From Ophelia neglecta (lineage: Eukaryota): 64,000 nucleotides of DNA. Every line of letters starts with the position of its first letter. Positions within the stretch are counted from its first letter, which is position 1. The stretch lies in the NCBI GenBank assembly GCA_965285935.1, contig OZ260661.1, positions 136,772,001 through 136,836,000 on the forward strand, written 5' to 3'. Positions 25,270 through 40,747 of this stretch are shown piece by piece. The notes beneath the pieces were generated by a model. It did no database searches and was not told where the DNA came from. It worked only from the letters and a program-made list of their open reading frames with translations. The position numbers were made by a program, and so were the translations under genes.

Positions 25270-28200
25270 TTAGGTTAGGTTTATTAACTCGCGGCCTCAT
25301 ATGAGACATGGAGTACAAACACTTCTACAAATACACATATATACATAAAATACTTAACAGGTGGATCTAGTAGGCTATAGAAATACACTTTTAATTGAAC
25401 AGCCTCAGCACTCTGCCAAGAAATAGGGACAATTTAAATTGAGACCGTATAGAATTAAACAGATTAACAAATTTAAACATGCTAGGACGGCTGTGACAAA
25501 ATGATGGTAGATATTTTCTACGTAATTCTCTAATAGTTTCGTGCTTACATTCGAGGACGACATGGTATTCATCACCCAAAATACCATCACTACACATTGT
25601 ACAAATACGCTCTGACCTTGGTATCTGGTGATACCAGCCTATTTCCACGGGCAGGCGGTGATTACTCGTACGAAATCTACAAAGATTAAATCCTAAAAAT
25701 TCCTGGGCAATTCGGTGAGGTAGGTTTCGTAAGAGTGTACACTTTTAAATGTTTTATAGGTTACACATAATGACTACTGGATAATTGTTCGCGTCACCTC
25801 TGACTATCTTGATCAGCTAAGATTCTATGTGATTCTTTAAACATTTGGTATTTACACCTACACCTTTGGAGTCAAAGATATTCGGGCAACCACATTGTTC
25901 GAGCGTTCTCTTGATGCAGTTTAGCCACGGACTTGTATACATTCCAGGCTCGTGTATTCTATTCAGATAACAAAGAACAATGTGACTCAGTTTAGAGTCT
26001 TAACCCTGTACAGTCCGAGCGCAAAAGGCGACCATTTTCTAGCTTTAATACAAACTGACATTGGGTGCCTTTCAGTTTTTCTGTATATCATATTGTTGCA
26101 AGTAGATTTTTTCAGCATAAGAAGGTATTTACAAAACCGTAAATGCAGGCGCTCTATCAAATCACTGTTACAGAATCCCCATACCTCACAACCGTAGGTT
26201 AGGATAGGAGCAACTAGTACATCAAAAAGCTCAAACGTTAATTTAATTGGCCATCGGAGGCTATTAGACCTACTGAGTAGTGACATCATAGCTCTTGATG
26301 CCTGATCGACAAGATTTTTGATACACAATTTAAAAATACCATTAAACCTGAAGACAATACCCAAATATTTGAAGTGCTCTACAATTTCAAGGGCTTTGTT
26401 TCCCAATTTAAAAGAACAGTTGTTGGGTCTCCGTTTACCAAAAACGCAAACTTTGGTTTTGAAGCATTAATCGTTAGATTCCATTTCTTACAATACCCAT
26501 TCAAATTATCAAGTCCTTTCTGCAGCTTTTCAGCGGTATTGGCAAAGAGAACGGTGTCATCGTCATACATTATCACAATAAATTTCATCATACACTGAGC
26601 ATCAATAAAAATGCCTTCATTTGCCTCCGATTCTAAATAATCTTCGAGGTCATTTATAAATAAGGAAAATAACAGTGGTGATAAGTTCTCACCCTGCCTT
26701 ACACCGGCCATATTAACAAAATAATCAGTCATTTTACCATTACTTATGACACATGATTTAACATTGCGATACAGGGACATTATAACTTTGACTATTTTAG
26801 ATTCCTTACTGAGACCTTGGTAATCTAGTTTCCACCAGAGTGCCTGACGCCAGATTTTATCGAAAGCTTTCTATAAAAGCGGTGCATCATCCCATCAATA
26901 ATAGACTTAAACAAAAATACATGGTCAGTTGTATTATAACCCTTGCGGAAGCCAGCTTGGTTTTCGCTCAGCAGGTTGTTTTCCTCAACAAATACATGCA
27001 GTCTACTATTTAATGCAGAGGTGAATTATTTACCTAAACAAGACAACAGTGTTATGTCCCGATAGTTAGATGGGTCTGATGCGTCCCCTTTATGCTTGTA
27101 GATAGGAAGAATGAGACCTACTGTTCAACTCTCAGGGATAATTCCTTGTGACAATATTTCATTAAATAGTCTTAGATAAACTGGCATGAGTAGAACTCGG
27201 CTATTTATTATGAACTCATTAATGGTGGGATCCACCCCACTTGACTTTTCTTTCTTTAAATTACCAATTGCTTGTTGCAACTCATCTGCCGTAAATGGGC
27301 GGTCAAGCGAGGTGAAGTCAATACAAGCAGAACCCCCTTCTCTATCTAACGTATTGTTGATATTCGAGTTATCTTTACCCAGATGATTGAAATGGTGGTA
27401 TAGATCTTGTAAGGTAGCTTTAACATGGGTTTTCTTTTTGCATTGTAGGATTCTCCAATATTCTTTACAGTTAGACTTTCTTAGGTTTGAGAGACGAGCC
27501 CGTAATTTTCTGTCAGTCTCAGCCTGAGCCTTTTGTCGCTCTCGTTTTAAAGTTTGACTGTTACGAACCAAGTCAACATGAGCTCTTTTTGACTTATGGC
27601 GTGAGTGATGGCGTCTAGCTGGATTATAATCAAGCTTAGCATTTTTATAATCAATGCTTTCAAAGACAACTTTATTTGTGGCTGCTCTGCTTGCGCTGTT
27701 CTTATCGTTACAATTTGGTTTTGGAAAAGTTTTAATCGCACTATCCAAGAGTATTGACGCCGCTAATGTCGTGACCTCATTAATATCAATGATTGTTTCA
27801 AAGTCAAGTTTCCGGATAAGTGAATCAATTTGGTTAACATCCAAATTGTTAATGAATTCATTTTTCTTTTCATTTTTCCAAAAAGCAAAAGGTTTTATAT
27901 AAGTTGTTAATGAAAGATTCTCCGTCTCATTACTTAAGATATCATTAGTAGTGGCGTTGGGATCTCTCCCAGGGAGACTTAGAGTGACTTCAATCGGGCA
28001 GTGCACGTCTGAATACAGTGGGTCAAAATGTAGCACTTCCAGGTGAGACACCAGTGATGCGATTGAAGGTGACCCAATAACATAGTCGACAACTGTGCCG
28101 AGCTTGGTTGTGGCAGCACCAATGTCACGGTCCTTGCCTATACGGCCATTGAATATAACTATCGAAGAATTCATACAGATTTCCAATAGGCGGTCACCAT

Positions 28201-28940
28201 ATTGCTGATCTTTTGAAATATCAACTGATTTTCTGACAACTTGTATACCTGTAGACGTTAATAATTGTCTAGTATTGAACATGCTAATCGTGCTTTCATC
28301 AACTCCTAATTCATCGAAAAGTCTTTCACCGATAGTGAGCATGTCACTTCTACGACCAGTGTGAGCATTCAAGTCACCCAGTATCAAATAATAATTAGTA
28401 TCTACGCCGTATTCTACTATGTTCTGTTCGAAATCTTTAAACATGTCAATATTGGAGTATTTAGAAGTCCTCGGTGGTATATACACATTACAGAGAAGCA
28501 TAATTCTGTCTAAACCACTTAATTCACTCGACACTTCAAACCATTGGCTAAAATTATTGGGGCTGCTATATTTTATATATTTAACAATGTTTTGCTTAAA
28601 TGCAACGATTAGACCACCAGACGCTTTACGTGCAAGTTTTGTTCTGTTATTTACATAAATAGCAAACTCATATTTCATGAATTCTGCAGTAATCTTTTCA
28701 ATATATGTGTCATCTAATTTAGTTTCTTGCAAGCATATAATATCGTAGTCATTTACATAACTCAGGAATTCCAATTTCCCTTTTAGCCCACCAATATTTA
28801 TATTTAAAATCTTTAGGCGCCTGCAGAAACATGCATTGCATTCTTGGGTCTGTACTCCTTCGGATTCCTATCTACTGTCATCGGGGGTCGAGTCCGCCAG
28901 CACCTCGAATCTATTTCGGGTAGCGGGATCGGCATTCGTT
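25270..28940 (-). mobile_element. 5'-truncated non-LTR retrotransposon, RTE-X-like
   Basis: End of ORF1 (RNRFEVLAD) followed by APE-RT ORF2 with a C-terminal Cys/His motif. 3' end is AATAAA plus (CCTAA)2. 5' boundary is approximate and no TSD was seen. Confidence 0.88.
25391..28867 (-). pseudogene. Disrupted LINE ORF2 (APE + RT + C-terminal Cys/His knuckle)
   Basis: LKILNINIGG, ICLQETK, NVYIPP, GDLNAH, VVDYVI, SDVHCP; GVRQGENLSPLLFSLFINDL, YDDDTV (YADD altered), YGCEVWG, IERLHLRFCK; ERICTMC...GDEYHVVLEC. Spread over ORFs 27125-28774, 26379-26780, 25987-26406 and 25391-25648 with stops and frameshifts. Confidence 0.9.
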
Positions 28941-31277: not shown

Positions 31278-32603
31278 TTGAAGTACTTTGGTGATCTAAT
31301 CTCCAGGAAGAACACAAACAACAAGAGGAAAGAAAAGGTGGCCGAAGATATTTTTAGCCTGTTCCTGTATATCGAGGGGGACTATACAATCGACCTTAGC
31401 AAACTGGTAGCCAGTAAAGATAGGGATAAATTCCAACAGTCGTTGGTTGGATCTGAAGTCCTTGTCGACAACAACACTGATTTATCTAGGCACCATAACG
31501 GAACACCCGATGGCGAAGTCCTTTCTAGTTTGGATGAAAACCACGACGCTGTAGCTGCAGCTAAGTCGGGTGACCGGGTAACTGCCAATATTGTTACTAG
31601 CACCTTGGCGGGTTTTCCTGGAGAAGCCACTGTACCGACAGGATTCTCCGACCCTCTACGTGCACTGTGTTCAGATATGATTACTTTAAACCGACAGCTT
31701 CAAGCACAGATTTCTCTACTGATGACTGAGAACAACTCACTCAGAGCAGAAAACAGACTTTTCCAAGAGAAATCAATGGAAATGAGAAATGATATTGACT
31801 CTATGAAAGTGAAGCTGAGAGAACTTGAAGTGACTGGAAAATTGGAGAGAGAATCAAACGAAAAAGTTAAGAAGACGGTTGATTTGATGGACGGCTCAGT
31901 GAATGCCATCCTATACAAATTGTTTGCCGGTGACTCAAAGATAGCTGTCGCCAATATGATGCAGAAGGCAAAAACCACACCAGATGCCAACCAATCTCAG
32001 ACCGACAGGCAGGAGGGCTTTTCTAGACCAGACGGTCCCATTATCTCGGGCCCTCCACCAGCAAAGCCCAGGTCAGACAGTGACATTGGGATAGTGTTCG
32101 GTATCCTGAGTCAGTTGGGCAAAGGTGGCGCAAGAAAAATTCCTACCGGCGCGGAGAGTGAGACGGAAGAACGCGGAGTTTCGCCCAATGACGACCGGGA
32201 CCCAGATGACTTTTCATCTCATGAAGAGAACGTCGCAGCTCGAGACATTCTGGAGGGTTTCACACCTGCAGACGGCATGGTACAGGTTGAAAACGAGACA
32301 GATGAAAACAATGACACTTTAGAGGGTTTTACTCCTGTACAGCGTAGACCCAGAGCTAAAGCTATTTATGTAGGCAGTGTAAAGATAAAAAGGTCTCTCG
32401 ATAATACACAGAGAGTATTGTTAAACTATCTGACAGACAAACAAGTTCATGTGACCCATTGTGTATTTTATAAGAAGTCTGGTCAATACCTGTCGTTCAA
32501 AGTAAACGTAGCCGCAGCGCATTATGAAACTGTGTCAGATCCATCCTTCTGGCCTGGGAATCTGAAAGTACGACAGTGGGAGTACAGACAGTCTAAAGAT
32601 TAA
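31278..32603 (+). CDS. LINE ORF1 protein (coiled coil + C-terminal RRM-like domain)
   Basis: 441-aa open frame with a heptad-rich central region and C-terminal SFKVNV...DPSFWPGNLKVRQW, typical of invertebrate LINE ORF1. It lies directly upstream of ORF2. The start codon is TTG in the track, so the true N-terminus is uncertain. Confidence 0.8.
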   Translation: MKYFGDLISRKNTNNKRKEKVAEDIFSLFLYIEGDYTIDLSKLVASKDRDKFQQSLVGSEVLVDNNTDLSRHHNGTPDGEVLSSLDENHDAVAAAKSGDRVTANIVTSTLAGFPGEATVPTGFSDPLRALCSDMITLNRQLQAQISLLMTENNSLRAENRLFQEKSMEMRNDIDSMKVKLRELEVTGKLERESNEKVKKTVDLMDGSVNAILYKLFAGDSKIAVANMMQKAKTTPDANQSQTDRQEGFSRPDGPIISGPPPAKPRSDSDIGIVFGILSQLGKGGARKIPTGAESETEERGVSPNDDRDPDDFSSHEENVAARDILEGFTPADGMVQVENETDENNDTLEGFTPVQRRPRAKAIYVGSVKIKRSLDNTQRVLLNYLTDKQVHVTHCVFYKKSGQYLSFKVNVAAAHYETVSDPSFWPGNLKVRQWEYRQSKD

Positions 32604-32605
32604 GA

Positions 32606-35600
32606 ATGGCCCATAGTCTAATTAAAATAAGTACATTTAACTGTTGGGGTTCTATGGCTTCGGCCAATTATATTTGTTCTCTTCTTAAGAAAACAGATGT
32701 GTTGTGCTTGCAGAAACACCATTTAAGACCAGAAAATTTGTCCTTTTTAAATTCACTTAATCTAGATTTTGATGCTTTCTCAAGAGTAGATGATCGAATG
32801 TATACACTGAGGCATGGGAAAGCAGGTGGGGTTGCTATTTTGTGGAGAAAGTCTCTCGGGTACGCAGTGTCTAAGCTGCATGACTGTGGTGATGACAGAA
32901 TACTGGGCATTCAAATAGCATGTCCAAATCAGACCCAATATATATACTTGTTTAGTGTATATCTACCTAGTAGTAACCATGGTGATGAAGAGTATCTCCA
33001 GAGTCTAGCTAAGCTAGAAGATGTATATGAATACTATAGTTCTCGTGGAATTGTTATCATTTGTGGGGATCTTAATGCCCAAATGGGGTTAGATGCAGGT
33101 CCTAATGGTTCACAAATATGTACCCGGAGAGGTCAAATGCTGCAGAATTATCTTGTTAGAATGAATGTGAAATCTATTAATTGTTCTGAAATTTTTACTG
33201 GTCCAAAGTGGACATACCGGGGACATGGTGACTTAAAATGTTCACAGATCGACCACATTTGTATACCGGGAGAGTATGTACATGTTGTAGAAAGTTGTTC
33301 TGTTGGGCCGGATTCTTCCTATAACACTTCTGATCACCTAGTAGTTAATTGTACGCTCAGATTCACCCTTGTCGCATTCGATGATGTAAGGCGAAAATTT
33401 CTGAATTGGCGAAATGGTGACACGGAATCCTATGCAAATATGAATAACTTTAGATTAATGGAATTATTTCGAAATTTTGAATTAAACACACTCGCGCCGA
33501 TACCACCAGCCACTATAGACAGACAATGTGAAGCTCTCATCGCGATCATGAGTAGTAGTGCACAGCAGTATTTTCCTGTGTCTAATGCTGTCCATTATCA
33601 GAATTCTTACTGGGATTAGGAACTGAACACGGCTCACGCCAAGCAAAATGCCTTGCGTAAAGCATGGAAGGACCAAGGATCGCCGAGAGGGAAGGAACAC
33701 CAGTTGTTTAGAAGTTATAAAGACGCAAAGACTAAATTTAGAATAATGCAGTACCTAAAAATTAAAAAGCGCGAAGAAGACCGCATGGCTAAAGTTGACG
33801 GCGAGATAGATCTGGTAGCTTTTTGGCGCTTCGTCAGGAGTCGCAGGGAGCCCCAAGAGAGTTTCCACATCATTAACGATAGTGAGAACACTTATACCAA
33901 CCCTGATGAGCTTCGAACGTTCTGGGCTACACACTTTGCCACACTGTTAAACGAGCAACAATGGGAATCGTCCAATTACGATAACGATTTTGCTGAAGCC
34001 GTACAGGCTGAAGTAGGAGACATTCTCAGTGACGCACACACTCAAGAAGACAATACGGGCATATTTGAAACAAAAATTACAGCCGAGGAAGTCCGTAAAA
34101 CGGCAAGGAAACTCCCAAACGGTATAGCTCCAGGCAAAGACTTTATAACATATGAACATTTGAGGTACGGAGGACATGTGTTGTATGAAGTGCTGGCCTA
34201 TTTATACAATAACATGATCCATCAAGTTCACATACCACAGTCATTCAAGAACGGTGTCCTCGTGCCCTTGTATAAGGGGAAGAAGAAACCGAAGGACAGT
34301 AAGGATTCGTACAGAGGAGTGACTTTAATGCCCGTTTTGAACAAATTGCTTGAAAAAAATTGTTGCTGAACGTATGAAACCATGGCTTTTGGAGAAGCAG
34401 TTTCCCAACAAACTGCAGCACTCTAAACCACAGTCGAGTAGCCTTCTCCTCTCCTTCTCCATACAGGAGGCTATACTACTCTTTGTGGAGCGTGGTAGCA
34501 GGGTATATGCGGCTTTTCTGGATGCAGAGAAGGCATTTGACAGAGTCTGGTGGAGTGCACTCTTGCTTAAGTTGTACCGACTTGGAGTAAAGGGATCTCC
34601 ATGGCTGCTTTTCCGCGAGTGGCTTATTGGATCGGAGATGTCTGTTATGTTGAGCGGCGTGCTTTCTCAACCCTTCTCTATCTCCAGAAGTATTAAGCAG
34701 GGAGGCATTTTATCTACGTTCATGCATGCGGTGGCGTACTGTGATTTTTACGACTGCATGTTGGAGACTGAGCGCGGGCTTCGATTGTCGGGCATTGACC
34801 TGGGTAGTCCTACTCTGGCGGATGATAGTGCGCTACTTTCCTGTACACGAAACAGCCTCCAGTTGATGCTCGATGCTGCTAGTGAGTACGCCAGGCGGTG
34901 GCGGCTGAAGTTCTCGTCCTCCAAAAGCAAAGTAATTGTGTTCGGCGAAAGTAAACACCAGACTGTGAAGAACAGTAATTGGCGTAAGTGGTGGCTAAAC
35001 GGTCAACAAATCGAGGAAGTCTACTCTGAGACCTATGTCGGTATCATTCTCACCTCTGACTTCAGGTCTGCCATGAGAACTCACTCAGCCTGTGTGAAGG
35101 GTAGATGTCAGCTGGCCGGTATGGCTTGGGTCGGTGTGACCGCAACTGGACTCAACCCAATAGTATCGGCCAGATTATGGCGGCAGGTTTGTTTGCCTTC
35201 GGCACTTCATGGCGCGGAACTGTGGTCAAATTTGACACTATCTGAAGTGACTGAGTTGGAGGCCATGCAAAGACATGCAGCTAAATCTATCCAGGGGTTC
35301 TTACGTAGAACACACACCTTGACAGCTTTGGGTACGCTTGGTTGGCTTTCAATAGAGTGTGAAATTGATGGTAAAAAGTTAATGTTTTTGCATAGGATTT
35401 CTACACTAGAACCAGATCGCCACTTAGCCAGTCAATTGTTTCTATTTAGATTAACTGACCGTTCAAATGTGCCTGAACAGAGAGGGTTTATTCCCGAGAT
35501 AATACGTTTTTTTGCTGAAATACGGTCTTAACGAGTTTGTCGATGATGTTACTTCTGTTAGTAAATTGTCTAGGCGTAAGTGGAAGTTTATTGTTTCATC

Positions 35601-38674: not shown

Positions 38675-38692
38675 TTGGGGTAAAACAAGGCA

Positions 38693-39447
38693 TATTATAC
38701 AACTAAGAAACTTCTCCGAGGGGACTAGTCCAAACAATTTGCCCCGAGGGAGGTGACCAGTGAACTATTTCCCGAGACCGAAGGTCGAGGGAAATAGTTC
38801 ACTGGTCACCTCCCGAGGGGCAAATTGTTTGGACTAGTCCCCGAGGGGCAAGTTTCATAGTTGTTTTATTATACATCATTGAAAAATCTTTGCACATTTA
38901 ACATCTCTATTGGTTCTATGCTCTAGATAGATCTATAGATTGTTTTACCTATTGTTCCATTACTGCAATAAAAATGTACACCATTATATGGAAAACAATA
39001 AATGCTGCAAACCTTGCCATTATCAGATTATTCAGCTGTTATTGATGTTCCGGGATCCCGCCGCGTTTGTTTTACGTTCGAAGTAGAGCTATGCGCATGG
39101 TTTCGTATTTATTGAACCCGCGTTTTCGGCAACATAGTCCAATTTTAAACGTGCAAATATATTTGAATAATGTATATTCTTATTTATTATCTTACTTTTT
39201 ATAAACCTGAAACAATTGACTGTAGTTTGTTTGGAAAATACTAATACGACAATAAAAATGGTGGTTTCGTTAGTGAAGTGCGTAAATTAGCCACACGAGG
39301 CCGCCACTGCTAGCCATGCGCTAGTTTCACGAACTAGTCCCCGGGACTAGTTCGTGAAACTAGCGTACGGCTGGGAAACTAGGCGATTCTAACCAACACC
39401 ATTCAACCAATCACAGGGCGGGATTTTTCAATGATGTATAATAAAAC
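38693..39447 (+). mobile_element. Non-autonomous foldback element with two hairpins and an internal complementary repeat
   Basis: Hairpin 1 spans 38699-38864 (~80-bp arms) and hairpin 2 spans 39319-39365 (23-bp arms). A perfect 26-bp inverted repeat links 38863-38888 and 39422-39447. Termini carry TATTATAC and GTATAATA. No ORF. Confidence 0.8.
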
Positions 39448-40747
39448 GAGATGATGAATGGCGGTAGGTCAAGGGGATGACCTTGATTTTTACATCTCTA
39501 GTTTGATCTTGTCACAAGGAAACGCTAACTATTTCTTAGGTCCCCATAAATTGACATAGTGAATCTCTATTCACGGAAGATTTAACGGAACATTCGCAGG
39601 TAACAGTCATTGAAAACCTTTTATCCCGAATCACGGACAAACAGATGCCAAACCTTCCGGAAAATTAAAAATTAAATTTCTGGATAACGGCCAATTAAAA
39701 AGTTCGAGAATAACCGCGCCTCCTTCAATTAGTGTCACTGTGTGCTTCTAACATTTCGGCCAGAATCAAAGAGAAGATCAGAATATCAGTGTTCATTGCG
39801 GATGACGTAGGTTTGTGGGTCGAAGTCTAAAACCACATATCAAATAATCAGATATAAGTAGAGGCTGCAAAGTTAAGGATAATGCCGTAAAACATTATAA
39901 TGTCACATCGGGTAAAATTGTGTCAATGCCACTCTATTGTGTATACGTGATTTGGGTTCAATGAGGTGGGCCGTATTGGCACTTGTTCCTGTGGTAAACT
40001 ACGTCATCAGTGATGCTATCGCGTCATCGCAAAATGTTCTGCAAACATTATCGACTGGTCAGCCATTCAAGAAGTAGATAATCAGGGCAACTTTATGTTT
40101 TTAGCTGTGCCGACCAATCAAGTAAGCAGAAAAGCTTCATCTGCACTTTGATTTATGAAACTGAACCACAAAAGAGCCGTTTTACAGAATTTTGTAATAT
40201 GGTTTAATACTTTAATCAGACCCAAGACCGTGCGTAAGTTTGCACTGGGACTTGCCAATGGATTGAGAATAAGAGAAGGTGTCTGTTCAACAAAACGCGC
40301 CTCCTGACCCGAAAGTAGCAATTATCTCCCCCTGCCAAATTTGTTGGATTGTTAGTCATCTTTCCTGATTGAGCATTCTTTTAAGTAACCCCCTTATTGT
40401 GTATTGCTCACCAGCAGCTACACGGCTCACCTAAAAGCCTGAAAACCATTTAAGTAACCAGGGACACGAACGATGTTTGTATGGTCACTTTCCGCTGAGC
40501 CTGGGAATTGAATTATACGTTTCGAGCTGGGATATCTCGGCCCTGTTCTCTTCCGGATGCATCTCGTGAGGTCACCACTGGCTCGTTTGTATTGCATTCT
40601 GACTCGCAAAATGGCCGACTTTTGACTACTTCTCATTGTAAATGCTGTCACATATTTTCCAATTTCACTTCATTTGGTATTTGGGCTGGAAATTGATATG
40701 TGTTGGCCTGAGGCAGGCGGTTTCTGATCACAATGGATCGATCTTAT

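What the first reader, a model, noticed from the sequence alone, without database searches (positions are those of the whole stretch)
38693..39447. Element carries an internal inverted copy of its right-end + left-end junction (candidate self-splinting circularisation system)
Seen: the reverse complement of 38851-38888 is GATTTTTCAATGATGTATAATAAAAC-AACTATGAAACT. Its first 26 nt match the right end (39422-39447) exactly. Its last part matches the left end ACAACTAAGAAACT (38699-38712) with one mismatch. In a single strand, this one internal segment would pair with both termini and hold them end to end. The termini also carry the inverted octamer TATTATAC (38693-38700) / GTATAATA (39436-39443), and no conventional TSD is visible. 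Established: DIRS retroelements use an internal complementary region to join their ends into a circle, which a tyrosine recombinase integrates without a TSD; Cryptons are tyrosine-recombinase DNA elements. Inference: this is a non-autonomous, non-coding member of a tyrosine-recombinase or HUH-type system that moves through a self-annealed ssDNA circle. It is the best candidate here for an undescribed system. The trans-acting enzyme is not in this window.
Basis: partly seen in the sequence, partly recalled or inferred. Interest (0 to 1): 0.85.

Follow-up and report, generated by a model that had tools for sequence, protein, structure and literature searches.

The report
Crypton transposon with self-complementary junction hairpin
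This 749-base repeat is a gene-less copy of a Crypton-type jumping gene moved by a tyrosine recombinase encoded elsewhere, and its built-in inverted copy of its own end-to-end joint is a conserved feature suggesting these elements recombine as a folded single DNA strand, as bacterial integron cassettes do.

Summary
It has about 78 copies and no target-site duplication, shown by paralogous empty sites.

Three 2.4-kb copies with the same ends carry one 480-aa ORF: a DUF3504/CryptonA tyrosine recombinase with an intact R-K-H-R-H-Y set and a Cre-like fold. The window copy is therefore a non-autonomous Crypton, a known superfamily.

The new part is the architecture, read in ORF orientation (window minus strand):
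- 5' end, then an inverted copy of that 5' end, then a long palindrome running to the 3' end.
- It recurs with unrelated sequences in 8 CryptonA families, from this genome, bivalves, sea urchins and a starfish.
- All 8 share an apex that reads CCC-GA-GNCC-GNA-GGNC-GA-GGG on the non-ORF strand.

93 insertions of two families lie in dyad targets (xTAx-N6-xTAx), always at the same edge of the 6-bp spacer. This argues that only one strand is exchanged.

Best reading: recombinase-driven, single-strand-biased transposition that uses a folded hairpin site, like integron attC or CTX phage. The mechanism is inferred, not shown; no read data could be obtained.

The parts
38696..39444 (-). Whole non-autonomous CryptonA element (749 bp). 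The ORF orientation of the family is the window minus strand.
   Evidence: At least 30 full-length copies at 91-100% identity. Conserved ends defined from 53 copies. About 78 copies in the genome.
39422..39444 (-). 5' terminus of the element in ORF orientation (the right end on the + strand), 23 nt. On the + strand it ends ...ATAA, an xTAx half-site immediately 5' of the inferred cut.
   Evidence: Identical in 51 of 51 insertions. Retained in all deletion derivatives.
38866..38888 (.). Internal inverted copy ('mirror') of the 23-nt terminus. It abuts the palindrome.
   Evidence: Repeat pair I3. Pairs with nt 727-749 in the fold. The equivalent segment is present in 8 families.
38699..38864 (.). 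Imperfect palindrome of about 166 bp. Its outer arm is the other terminus of the element.
   Evidence: Core pair I1, 60-nt arms at 93% complementarity, extended by the fold to nt 4-169. Present at the same place in 8 families.
38696..38698 (+). TAT, the first 3 nt of the + strand. They are not mirrored and stay unpaired in the fold. They lie directly 3' of the inferred cleavage site.
   Evidence: In five families the junction is 2 nt longer than its mirror at this point.
38771..38791 (+). Conserved hairpin apex, CCC-GA-GACC-GAA-GGTC-GA-GGG on the + strand. It is a GNA triloop on a GC stem flanked by a tandem G.A mismatch.
   Evidence: The same module is found in all families compared.
38851..38888 (.).
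38692..38695 (.). Target half-site ATAT, flanking the element.
   Evidence: Target logo from 51 insertions.
39445..39454 (.). Target 6-bp spacer (AACGAG) followed by the second half-site (ATGA).
   Evidence: Target logo showing dyad xTAx-N6-xTAx. Empty sites.
39001..39003 (.). Breakpoint of the roughly 1.69-kb internal deletion that removed the recombinase ORF, relative to the autonomous copy.
   Evidence: BLAST of the window copy against L031/L032/L033.
39312..39372 (.). Second, subterminal palindrome (30-nt arms) in the 5' region. It shares the ACTAGTCCC/GGGACTAGT motif with the main palindrome.
   Evidence: Pair I2. Retained in 52-53 of 53 copies, within the first 150 nt of the ORF-orientation 5' end.
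39407..39411 (+). CCAAT box (ATTGG on the ORF strand), 33-37 nt from the 5' end. Probably the promoter element of the recombinase gene.
   Evidence: Read from the sequence. A similar GATTGG lies near the 5' end in family B, the starfish and Lytechinus elements.

Best explanation
Identity (near certain). Window 38696-39444 is a non-autonomous internal-deletion derivative of a 2.43-kb CryptonA DNA transposon. It is mobilised in trans by a 480-aa DUF3504-type tyrosine recombinase (YR). Two intact copies of that gene lie about 1.9 Mb away on the same chromosome.

Mechanism (inferred). The YR recognises xTAx half-sites and cuts directly 3' of them. In the target these form a dyad, xTAx-N6-xTAx. In the element, the joined ends read ...ATAA|TATACA... 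on the window + strand.

Only one strand is exchanged with the target. By the usual YR polarity this is the + strand, which is the non-ORF strand. The resulting junction is resolved by replication. That explains three observations:
- The element always sits at the same edge of the 6-bp spacer.
- It always keeps its own last 6 nt.
- It leaves no TSD.

The substrate is the folded + strand of a circular or end-joined form. The internal segment (mirror plus inner palindrome arm) pairs with both termini. This builds a long hairpin whose duplex arms flank the cut site, with the first 3 nt after the cut unpaired. The arrangement resembles integron attC sites and the CTX-phage attP(+) hairpin.
For: Identity:
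- Family ends, and three long copies with the same ends.
- A single ORF matching DUF3504 at 41 bits (cut-off 29.7) and Phage_integrase at 27.9 bits (cut-off 27.1).
- R169, K203, H291, R294, H317 and Y326 are conserved in a 50-sequence alignment.
- The AF2 model (pLDDT 78) matches QRICH1, Cre, Tn1549 Int, Xer, IntI and lambda Int.
- All 53 copies keep roughly the first 150 nt and roughly the last 190 nt, which hold the mirror and the palindrome.

Mechanism:
- Dyad target logos. Family A, n=51: A at -8 in 49 and T at +2 in 48, with the left half the reverse complement of the right. Family B, n=42: RTAY-N6-RTAY, T at +2 in 42 of 42.
- Insertion is at the same spacer edge in 93 of 93 cases.
- L030 and L034 use the same site in opposite orientations, 6 bp apart. 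Their joined flanks align without gaps. Further empty sites agree.
- No copy carries a foreign 6-mer at its 3' end or its own 6-mer at its 5' flank. A double-strand exchange across mismatched spacers would give that in about half of events.
- The architecture recurs in 8 families with unrelated sequences.
- The junction is 2 nt longer than its mirror in five families.
- The apex has a GNA triloop and a tandem G.A mismatch on the non-ORF strand in all families.
- The non-ORF-strand hairpin is predicted more stable in 8 of 8 families.
- The fold places the termini end to end.
- Tandem dimers with an exact end-to-end joint exist in both families.
Against: - No circle, single-strand intermediate or excision event was observed.
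- The choice of strand rests on the canonical YR cleavage polarity, which was not tested for this enzyme.
- The apex loop is also a UNCG-type loop on the ORF strand, so an RNA-level role is not excluded.
- Spacer-edge preferences differ between families. Family A prefers TA at -2/-1; family B prefers T at -1, unlike its own terminal A. Simple homology testing at the cut is therefore not general.
- In family A the junction's own dyad has a 7-nt spacer, not 6.
- Four of 12 recombinase loci examined showed no such architecture: coral, Limulus, Amphiura and family C of this genome. These may be dead or domesticated copies.
- Ends in the other species are inferred from single copies.
Confidence: 0.55

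Rival explanations
1. Same element (a non-autonomous CryptonA), but transposition goes through an ordinary double-stranded circle. On this view the mirror and the long palindrome are protein-binding or architectural DNA: extra recombinase-binding sites that scaffold the synapse, a cruciform, or a regulatory or decoy site. They would not be a folded single-strand substrate.
For: - The published Crypton model is a double-stranded circle recombining with a short target motif (for active CryptonF).
- The YR fold resembles Cre and Tn1549 integrase, which act on duplex DNA.
- The mirror has the same half-sites as the junction with a shorter spacer, as a non-cleavable binding site might.
Against: - A two-strand exchange across non-identical 6-bp spacers should leave about half of copies permuted or carrying a foreign 6-mer. 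None of 93 does.
- Arms of 50-90 bp at more than 90% complementarity are far longer than protein-binding sites.
- A conserved mismatch that is a tandem G.A only on one strand, together with a GNA loop, makes sense only in an extruded or single strand.
Confidence: 0.3
2. A DIRS-like retroelement derivative. The internal complementary region would template completion of the ends during reverse transcription, with reverse transcriptase supplied in trans by DIRS elements of the same genome.
For: - DIRS elements have an internal complementary region matching both ends.
- A gag plus YR element is noted elsewhere in this genome (s1-736082, not checked here).
- The apex reads as a UUCG-type loop on the RNA-sense strand.
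Against: - The autonomous copy is 2.4 kb with a single YR ORF and no RT, RNase H or methyltransferase.
- It has no inverted terminal repeats beyond 6 nt.
- The mirror covers only 14-36 nt of the 5' end, while the CCAAT box implies that transcription starts further inside.
- The oyster and scallop homologue gene models are longer than their coding length and do not translate colinearly, which suggests a retained intron.
- The dyad target with an edge-specific insertion fits direct DNA recombination.
Confidence: 0.04
3. A Helentron/Helitron2-type non-autonomous element (HINE) moved by a Rep/helicase. On the minus strand it shows a 5' (sub)terminal inverted repeat, its partner near the 3' end, and a 3' palindrome.
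For: The architecture resembles HINEs: subTIRs plus a 3' palindrome and no target-site modification.
Against: - All long copies with these ends encode a tyrosine recombinase, not Rep/helicase.
- The target is xTAx-N6-xTAx, not TT or a T-rich tract.
- There are no terminal T runs.
Confidence: 0.01
4. A chance composite of an ordinary TIR MITE (38863-39447) and an unrelated neighbouring palindrome.
For: A perfect 26-nt inverted repeat brackets 38863-39447.
Against: - The unit that repeats in the genome is 38696-39444. The palindrome is part of every copy.
- There is no TSD at 38863.
- The same two-part structure is found in other families and phyla.
Confidence: 0.01

Closest known systems
Crypton DNA transposons, CryptonA group (Goodwin et al. 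2003; Kojima & Jurka 2011, PMC3212892)
   Same: - A single DUF3504-type tyrosine recombinase ORF, with no RT.
- No TSD and no long TIRs.
- Non-autonomous derivatives that outnumber the autonomous copies.
- Marine-invertebrate hosts among the homologues.
   Different: The literature searched reports no terminal repeats of any kind for animal Cryptons. It names a short direct repeat as the only distinguishing feature of Cryptons in general, and boundaries were not identifiable for fungal CryptonA. Here the ends are exact. There is a junction-complementary internal segment, a 100-190-bp terminal palindrome with a conserved apex, and a dyad target with a 6-bp spacer.
DIRS1-type retrotransposons (internal complementary region, ICR)
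   Same: A tyrosine recombinase, and an internal segment complementary to both outer ends, that is, an inverted copy of the circle junction.
   Different: There is no RT, RNase H or methyltransferase and there are no long inverted terminal repeats. The element behaves as a DNA transposon. The Crypton structure might be the ancestor of the ICR; that is speculation.
Integron attC sites with IntI, and CTX-phage attP(+) with XerCD (folded single-strand YR substrates; from my own knowledge; IntI-attC structure 2a3v appears among the fold hits)
   Same: - A YR enzyme.
- An imperfect palindrome whose folded strand forms the site.
- Conserved unpaired bases at or near the crossover.
- A product geometry that fits exchange of one strand resolved by replication.
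- A weakly specific duplex target.
   Different: This is eukaryotic and a self-contained transposon. The hairpin is much longer. No biochemical evidence exists. The enzyme is no closer to IntI or Xer than to Cre.
Tn916/Tn1549 conjugative-transposon integrases
   Same: A YR transposase that inserts a circular form into degenerate AT-rich dyad targets with a 6-7-bp spacer, without spacer homology. Tn1549 Int is among the fold hits.
   Different: The Tn916 family carries variable 'coupling sequences' from the previous site. Here the element's terminal 6-mer was the same in 50 of 51 family-A and in all family-B insertions, and the neighbouring spacer is always target DNA.
Helentron/HINE (DINE-1-like) elements (PMC4067079)
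   Same: A (sub)terminal inverted repeat whose 3' partner is followed by a palindrome, no target modification, and abundant non-autonomous copies.
   Different: Those use a Rep/helicase and a TT target. This resemblance is convergent: another single-strand-oriented system with a similar end geometry.

Membership tests
Crypton (CryptonA) | The autonomous element encodes a tyrosine recombinase and no reverse transcriptase or DDE transposase. | tested here: met
   L031 element of 2436 bp. The only Pfam-supported ORF is 480 aa: DUF3504 at 41.2 bits (cut-off 29.7) and Phage_integrase at 27.9 bits (cut-off 27.1).
Crypton (CryptonA) | Catalytic R-(K)-H-R-(H/W)-Y residues and a YR fold. | tested here: met
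   R169 and Y326 are invariant; K203, H291, R294 and H317 are at least 90% conserved. Foldseek hits to QRICH1, Cre, Xer and Int with probability 1.00.
Crypton (CryptonA) | No target-site duplication and no long terminal inverted repeats. | tested here: met
   Gap-free paralogous empty sites for families A and B. The true terminal inverted repeat is only about 6 nt.
Crypton (CryptonA) | A short motif at one terminus that resembles the target (the Goodwin recombination model). | tested here: inconclusive
   The element's terminal xTAx (TTAT/ATAA) matches the target half-site core TA. No 4-6-bp direct repeat is present.
Crypton (CryptonA) | An extrachromosomal circular intermediate. | not testable with these tools
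   Only indirect evidence: tandem dimers with an exact end-to-end joint (L021, L094). Read data were unavailable.
Non-autonomous derivative of that Crypton | Shares both termini with the autonomous copy and lacks the ORF. | tested here: met
   The window copy aligns to L031 over both end regions at 99% identity, with a 1.69-kb internal deletion.
DIRS1-like retrotransposon | RT/RNase H (and methyltransferase) genes and long inverted terminal repeats. | tested here: not met
   No such ORFs or repeats in the 2.4-kb copy.
DIRS1-like retrotransposon | An internal region complementary to both ends. | tested here: met
   38851-38888 and its equivalents in 8 families. This is a resemblance, not membership.
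Helentron / HINE | A Rep/helicase(-endonuclease) autonomous partner and insertion into TT. | tested here: not met
   The partner is a YR. The target is xTAx-N6-xTAx.
Folded single-strand YR sites (attC / CTX attP type), 'works like' | An imperfect palindrome with conserved unpaired bases at the crossover, and a structure-specific strand bias. | tested here: met
   - Conserved 3x1 bulge at the cut.
- GNA loop and tandem G.A on one strand in all families.
- That strand is more stable in 8 of 8 families.
All computational.
Folded single-strand YR sites (attC / CTX attP type), 'works like' | Recombination of one strand only, resolved by replication. | tested here: inconclusive
   93 of 93 insertions lie at one spacer edge, with the element's own 6-mer retained. 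This is compatible but indirect.
IS200/IS605-type (HUH) single-strand transposons | An HUH (Y1) transposase. | tested here: not met
   The enzyme is a YR of the integrase fold.

The most novel reading that the evidence does not exclude
CryptonA transposons are eukaryotic counterparts of integron cassettes and CTX phage. Their tyrosine recombinase would act on a single DNA strand that folds on a built-in complement of its own end-to-end junction, exchanges one strand with a dyad xTAx-N6-xTAx target, and lets replication finish the job. This would be the first single-strand, hairpin-templated tyrosine-recombinase transposition pathway in eukaryotes. The junction complement could also be the evolutionary source of the DIRS internal complementary region.
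Probability: 0.4. Interest if true: 0.85.

Novelty: new variant of a known kind. Interest (0 to 1): 0.72.

Why it matters
Cryptons are among the least understood eukaryotic transposons. For animal Cryptons the papers I could search report no terminal repeats and no defined target, and the transposition mechanism is only a model.

These data add, for two families in this genome:
- exact ends;
- a minimal cis region of about 150 nt plus 190 nt;
- a dyad target with a 6-bp spacer;
- a strand-asymmetric insertion rule.

A structured DNA module is also conserved across molluscs and echinoderms.

That turns 'how do Cryptons move?' into concrete experiments with one small enzyme and short oligonucleotide substrates. 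If the folded-strand model holds, three things follow:
- It extends the integron/CTX paradigm to eukaryotes.
- It links Cryptons to the DIRS internal complementary region.
- It describes a compact recombinase-plus-hairpin system that inserts without a TSD or double-strand breaks.

It would also give a structural signature for annotating non-autonomous Cryptons, which at present go unclassified.

Tried and rejected
1. Helentron/HINE reading. I considered it after seeing the minus-strand geometry and reading PMC4067079. I dropped it when the long copies proved to encode a YR and the target proved not to be TT.

2. 'MITE plus unrelated palindrome'. Rejected by the family boundaries.

3. TSDs of 2-9 bp (TA, TWA, TATTATAC). 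None holds across copies.

4. Homology between the element's terminal 6-mer and the target spacer as a general rule. It holds weakly for family A (TA at -2/-1) but not for family B.

6. Sequence search of the YR against solved structures. Only spurious ribosomal hits at E 0.58. The fold search was used instead.

7. An orthologous or haplotig empty site for L029.

8. Loci that showed no palindrome-plus-mirror architecture:
   - family C of this genome (L047/L048, 29% identity);
   - Oculina, Limulus and Amphiura.
   They may be degraded or domesticated copies. They were not counted as support.

9. My first palindrome scanner missed the Mytilus and Lytechinus hairpins, which have long loops or indels. 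They were found by inspection, so the negatives above are weak.

10. The organism was not identified. The closest recombinase homologues, at 55% identity or less, are from echinoderms, bivalves and unnamed marine assemblies.
Full report
**1. Observation**

38863-38888 is the exact reverse complement of 39422-39447 (26 nt). The adjoining 38851-38864 is complementary to the left end 38699-38712 with one mismatch. 38699-38866 is a long imperfect palindrome.

Folding the + strand of 38696-39444 with DNA parameters gives -170.6 kcal/mol. The last 23 nt pair with nt 171-193, and nt 4 onwards pair with nt 169 downwards. The termini are therefore held end to end on the internal segment, with only TAT (nt 1-3) and nt 170 unpaired.

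**2. It is a repeat family with exact ends**

The genome is a 762-Mb eukaryote; the window is C1:136772001-136836000. A genome search returned at least 30 full-length copies at 91-100% identity. The 23-nt end motif occurs 78 times forward and 79 times reverse, against 0 for the control. That is about 78 elements, each with one terminal and one internal inverted copy.

Aligning copies with their flanks places the conserved ends at 38696 (TATACAAC...) and 39444 (...GTATAATAA). The rival reading of an ordinary MITE at 38863-39447 beside an unrelated palindrome is excluded, because the palindrome is part of every copy.

**3. The enzyme**

The spacing between the two motif copies is usually 556 nt. 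In three places it is about 2240 nt. Those 2.43-kb copies (L031/L037, its segmental duplicate L033/L038, and L032) carry a 1.69-kb insert at window position 39001-39003. The insert holds one 480-aa ORF on the minus strand.

- The ORF matches Pfam DUF3504 (41.2 bits, cut-off 29.7) and Phage_integrase (27.9 bits, cut-off 27.1), plus the QRICH1 N-domain at 26.7 bits, below its 30.8 cut-off.
- Two copies are intact and identical. The chromosome-7 copy is split by a frameshift.
- In a 50-sequence alignment R169 and Y326 are invariant, and K203, H291, R294 and H317 are at least 90% conserved.
- An AlphaFold model (pLDDT 78, residues 1-350 confident) matches QRICH1, Cre, Tn1549 integrase, Xer, IntI and lambda Int.
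- Homologues at 55% identity or less are in sea urchins, a brittle star, a starfish, oysters, scallops, mussels, corals and unnamed marine assemblies.

This is a CryptonA-type tyrosine-recombinase transposon, and the window copy is its non-autonomous deletion derivative. All 53 copies analysed keep roughly the first 150 nt and roughly the last 190 nt in ORF orientation. The last 190 nt contain the mirror and the palindrome. A 366-bp subfamily keeps little else.

I found it independently.

**4. No TSD, a dyad target and a fixed insertion edge**

Fifty-one independent family-A insertions were oriented by the ORF strand.

| Position | Bases observed |
|---|---|
| -10 | never G |
| -9 | T34, C15 |
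| -8 | A in 49 of 51 |
| -7 | never C |
| -6 to -1 | variable 6-bp spacer |
| (element) | |
| +1 | A22, C21, T8, G0 |
| +2 | T in 48 of 51 |
| +3 | A42, G8 |
| +4 | G24, T20 |

The left motif is the reverse complement of the right one. The target is therefore a dyad, xTAx-N6-xTAx, with the element always at the 3' edge of the spacer.

A second family, B, has a recombinase 35-37% identical to A, no DNA similarity, about 115 copies, a 1.96-kb autonomous form and mostly 423-bp derivatives. Its 42 insertions give RTAY-N6-RTAY, with T at +2 in 42 of 42, and the same edge. The half-site flavour differs between the families, as expected if each recombinase reads its own target.

L030 and L034 are insertions into paralogous copies of another repeat. 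They use the same CCAG-TTCGAA-TTAG site in opposite orientations, 6 bp apart, and the joined flanks align without gaps. Four more gap-free paralogous empty sites cover both families. Insertion is therefore exact, with no duplication and no loss.

**5. Why this points to exchange of one strand**

Tyrosine recombinases cut the two strands 6-8 bp apart, at the 5' edges of the spacer. This is established knowledge for Cre, lambda Int, Xer and the Tn916 family.

If both strands were exchanged between an element junction and a target whose spacers differ, each junction would be a heteroduplex. After replication, about half of the insertions would carry the element's 6-mer on the other side, or a foreign 6-mer as in Tn916 coupling sequences.

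That is not seen. In 93 of 93 insertions the element's own terminal 6-mer (family A TGTATA, family B CTGATA in ORF orientation) sits at the 3' end, with a single-base variant (TGTATG) in one family-A copy (L012). The target spacer sits intact on the 5' side.

The simplest account is that only the strand cut at that edge is transferred and replication resolves the rest. By canonical polarity this is the non-ORF strand, which is the window + strand. On that strand the cut falls 3' of xTAx in both partners: the element reads ...ATAA|TATACA and the target reads xTAx|N6. This step is inference.

**6. The internal junction copy is a conserved, co-varying architecture**

In ORF orientation the layout is: 5' end, ORF, inverted copy of the 5' end, 1-5 nt, then a long palindrome running to the 3' end. 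It is found, with unrelated sequences, in these eight families:

| Family | Locus |
|---|---|
| A (this genome) | window, L031 |
| B (this genome) | L043: 17-nt mirror, 139-bp palindrome |
| Magallana gigas | L064 |
| Argopecten irradians | L086 |
| Mytilus edulis | L089 |
| Diadema setosum | L065 |
| Lytechinus variegatus | L131 |
| Patiria miniata | L088: 36-nt mirror |

The shared features are:
- The 5' ends begin TT[A/G]T in six of the eight families. The Mytilus end reads TTAA and the Lytechinus boundary is unclear.
- The 3' ends finish ...GTATA, ...TGATA or ...ATATA in seven of the eight families (the Mytilus end is unclear), and where the end is defined the next bases fit xT[A/G].
- In five families the true junction is 2 nt longer than its mirror (GTATA|TT against GTT.TT). 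Pairing therefore leaves a small bulge exactly at the cut.
- The palindrome apex is conserved in the seven families compared at the apex; in Lytechinus it is disrupted by a duplication. On the ORF strand it reads CCC-TC-GNCC-TTC-GGNC-TC-GGG. On the other strand this is a GC stem capped by a GNA loop (GAA in five, GCA in Diadema, GCTA in Mytilus), flanked by a 2x2 mismatch that is a tandem G.A in a pyrimidine-GA-purine context.

From my own knowledge, GNA triloops and sheared tandem G.A pairs are unusually stable DNA motifs. The T.C mismatches on the other strand are not. The non-ORF-strand hairpin is predicted more stable in 8 of 8 families, by 0.5-7.9 kcal/mol.

A mismatch conserved across phyla inside a palindrome, favourable on one strand only, argues that the hairpin forms as an extruded or single strand. 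That strand is the same one implicated by the insertion asymmetry.

Tandem dimers with an exact end-to-end joint exist in both families (L021, L094). The joint is therefore a real recombination product.

**7. Comparison with what is known**

Membership in Crypton/CryptonA is met on enzyme, coding content, absence of a TSD and the presence of non-autonomous derivatives.

The literature I could search says the following:
- Animal Cryptons have no terminal repeats, direct or inverted (PMC3212892).
- The only distinguishing feature of Cryptons is a short direct repeat (PMC8969392).
- Boundaries could not be defined for fungal CryptonA (PMC13465315).
- Active CryptonF in Chlamydomonas fits a terminal-motif/target-motif model but increases in copy number (PMC9977147). 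A replicative single-strand pathway would explain that.

I found no description of the junction-complementary segment, the apex module or the dyad target.

The nearest functional analogues are integron attC/IntI and CTX-phage attP(+)/XerCD. The nearest structural analogue in eukaryotes is the DIRS internal complementary region. Helentron/HINE ends look similar but use a different enzyme and target.

**8. Limits**

- Element ends in the other species come from single copies.
- Four of 12 recombinase loci examined lacked the architecture.
- The strand assignment depends on canonical polarity.
- An RNA-level role for the hairpin, which forms a UNCG-type loop on the sense strand, is not excluded.

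**Verdict**

The identity as a non-autonomous CryptonA is about 95% certain. The folded-strand, one-strand-exchange mechanism is about 55% likely, and a double-stranded circle with an architectural role for the palindrome is about 30% likely.

Noticed in passing
window 31278-35531 (+) and 27125-28774 (-): LINE-like retrotransposon ORFs. The + strand run has Exo_endo_phos at 32606-33619 and RVT_1 at 34350-35531. The minus-strand ORF at 27125-28774 matches Exo_endo_phos only. They explain the GC rise at 30-36 kb and are unrelated to the Crypton.
   Followed up: partly
L043:1132-3087 and about 115 genomic copies (for example L090-L129): A second Crypton family, B, in the same genome. Its recombinase is 35-37% identical to family A. 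It has a 1.96-kb autonomous form and mostly 423-bp non-autonomous copies. It shares the architecture but has a different target half-site (RTAY).
   Followed up: yes
L042:2992-3045: One family-B autonomous copy carries an extra 54-bp copy of its own 5' end, inserted at an ATAC (RTAY-like) site inside its own palindrome. It looks like an intramolecular or aborted recombination event.
   Followed up: no
L021 (C5:35689361-35690948) and L094 (C1:112683880-112684577): Head-to-tail tandem dimers of families A and B, with the 3' end joined directly to the 5' end and no intervening base.
   Followed up: partly
window 38720-38731, 38831-38842, 39333-39351: The self-complementary motif GGGACTAGTCCC, or halves of it, recurs in both arms of the main palindrome and at the centre of the second palindrome. 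It may be a binding site for the recombinase or a host factor.
   Followed up: no
L031:1793-1947: The autonomous copy has an AT-rich tandem repeat (75-bp unit, 2.1 copies) between the ORF stop and the mirror. The corresponding region varies in length among non-autonomous copies.
   Followed up: no
L037 and L038 (C1:138736987-138741426 and C1:138794238-138798677): The two intact autonomous copies lie 57 kb apart, and their flanks are also 99.9% identical. They are one insertion copied by a segmental duplication, not two transposition events.
   Followed up: partly
L039/L040 (C7:91953633-91955885): The third long copy has its recombinase reading frame split in two at about residue 320, so it is presumably inactive.
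   Followed up: no
L047/L048 (C5:111131334-111135371 and C5:115800091-115804128): A more distant DUF3504-like ORF (413 aa, 29% identity) is present in two 96%-identical 2.66-kb copies. No mirror or palindrome architecture was seen. It could be another Crypton lineage or a duplicated domesticated gene.
   Followed up: partly
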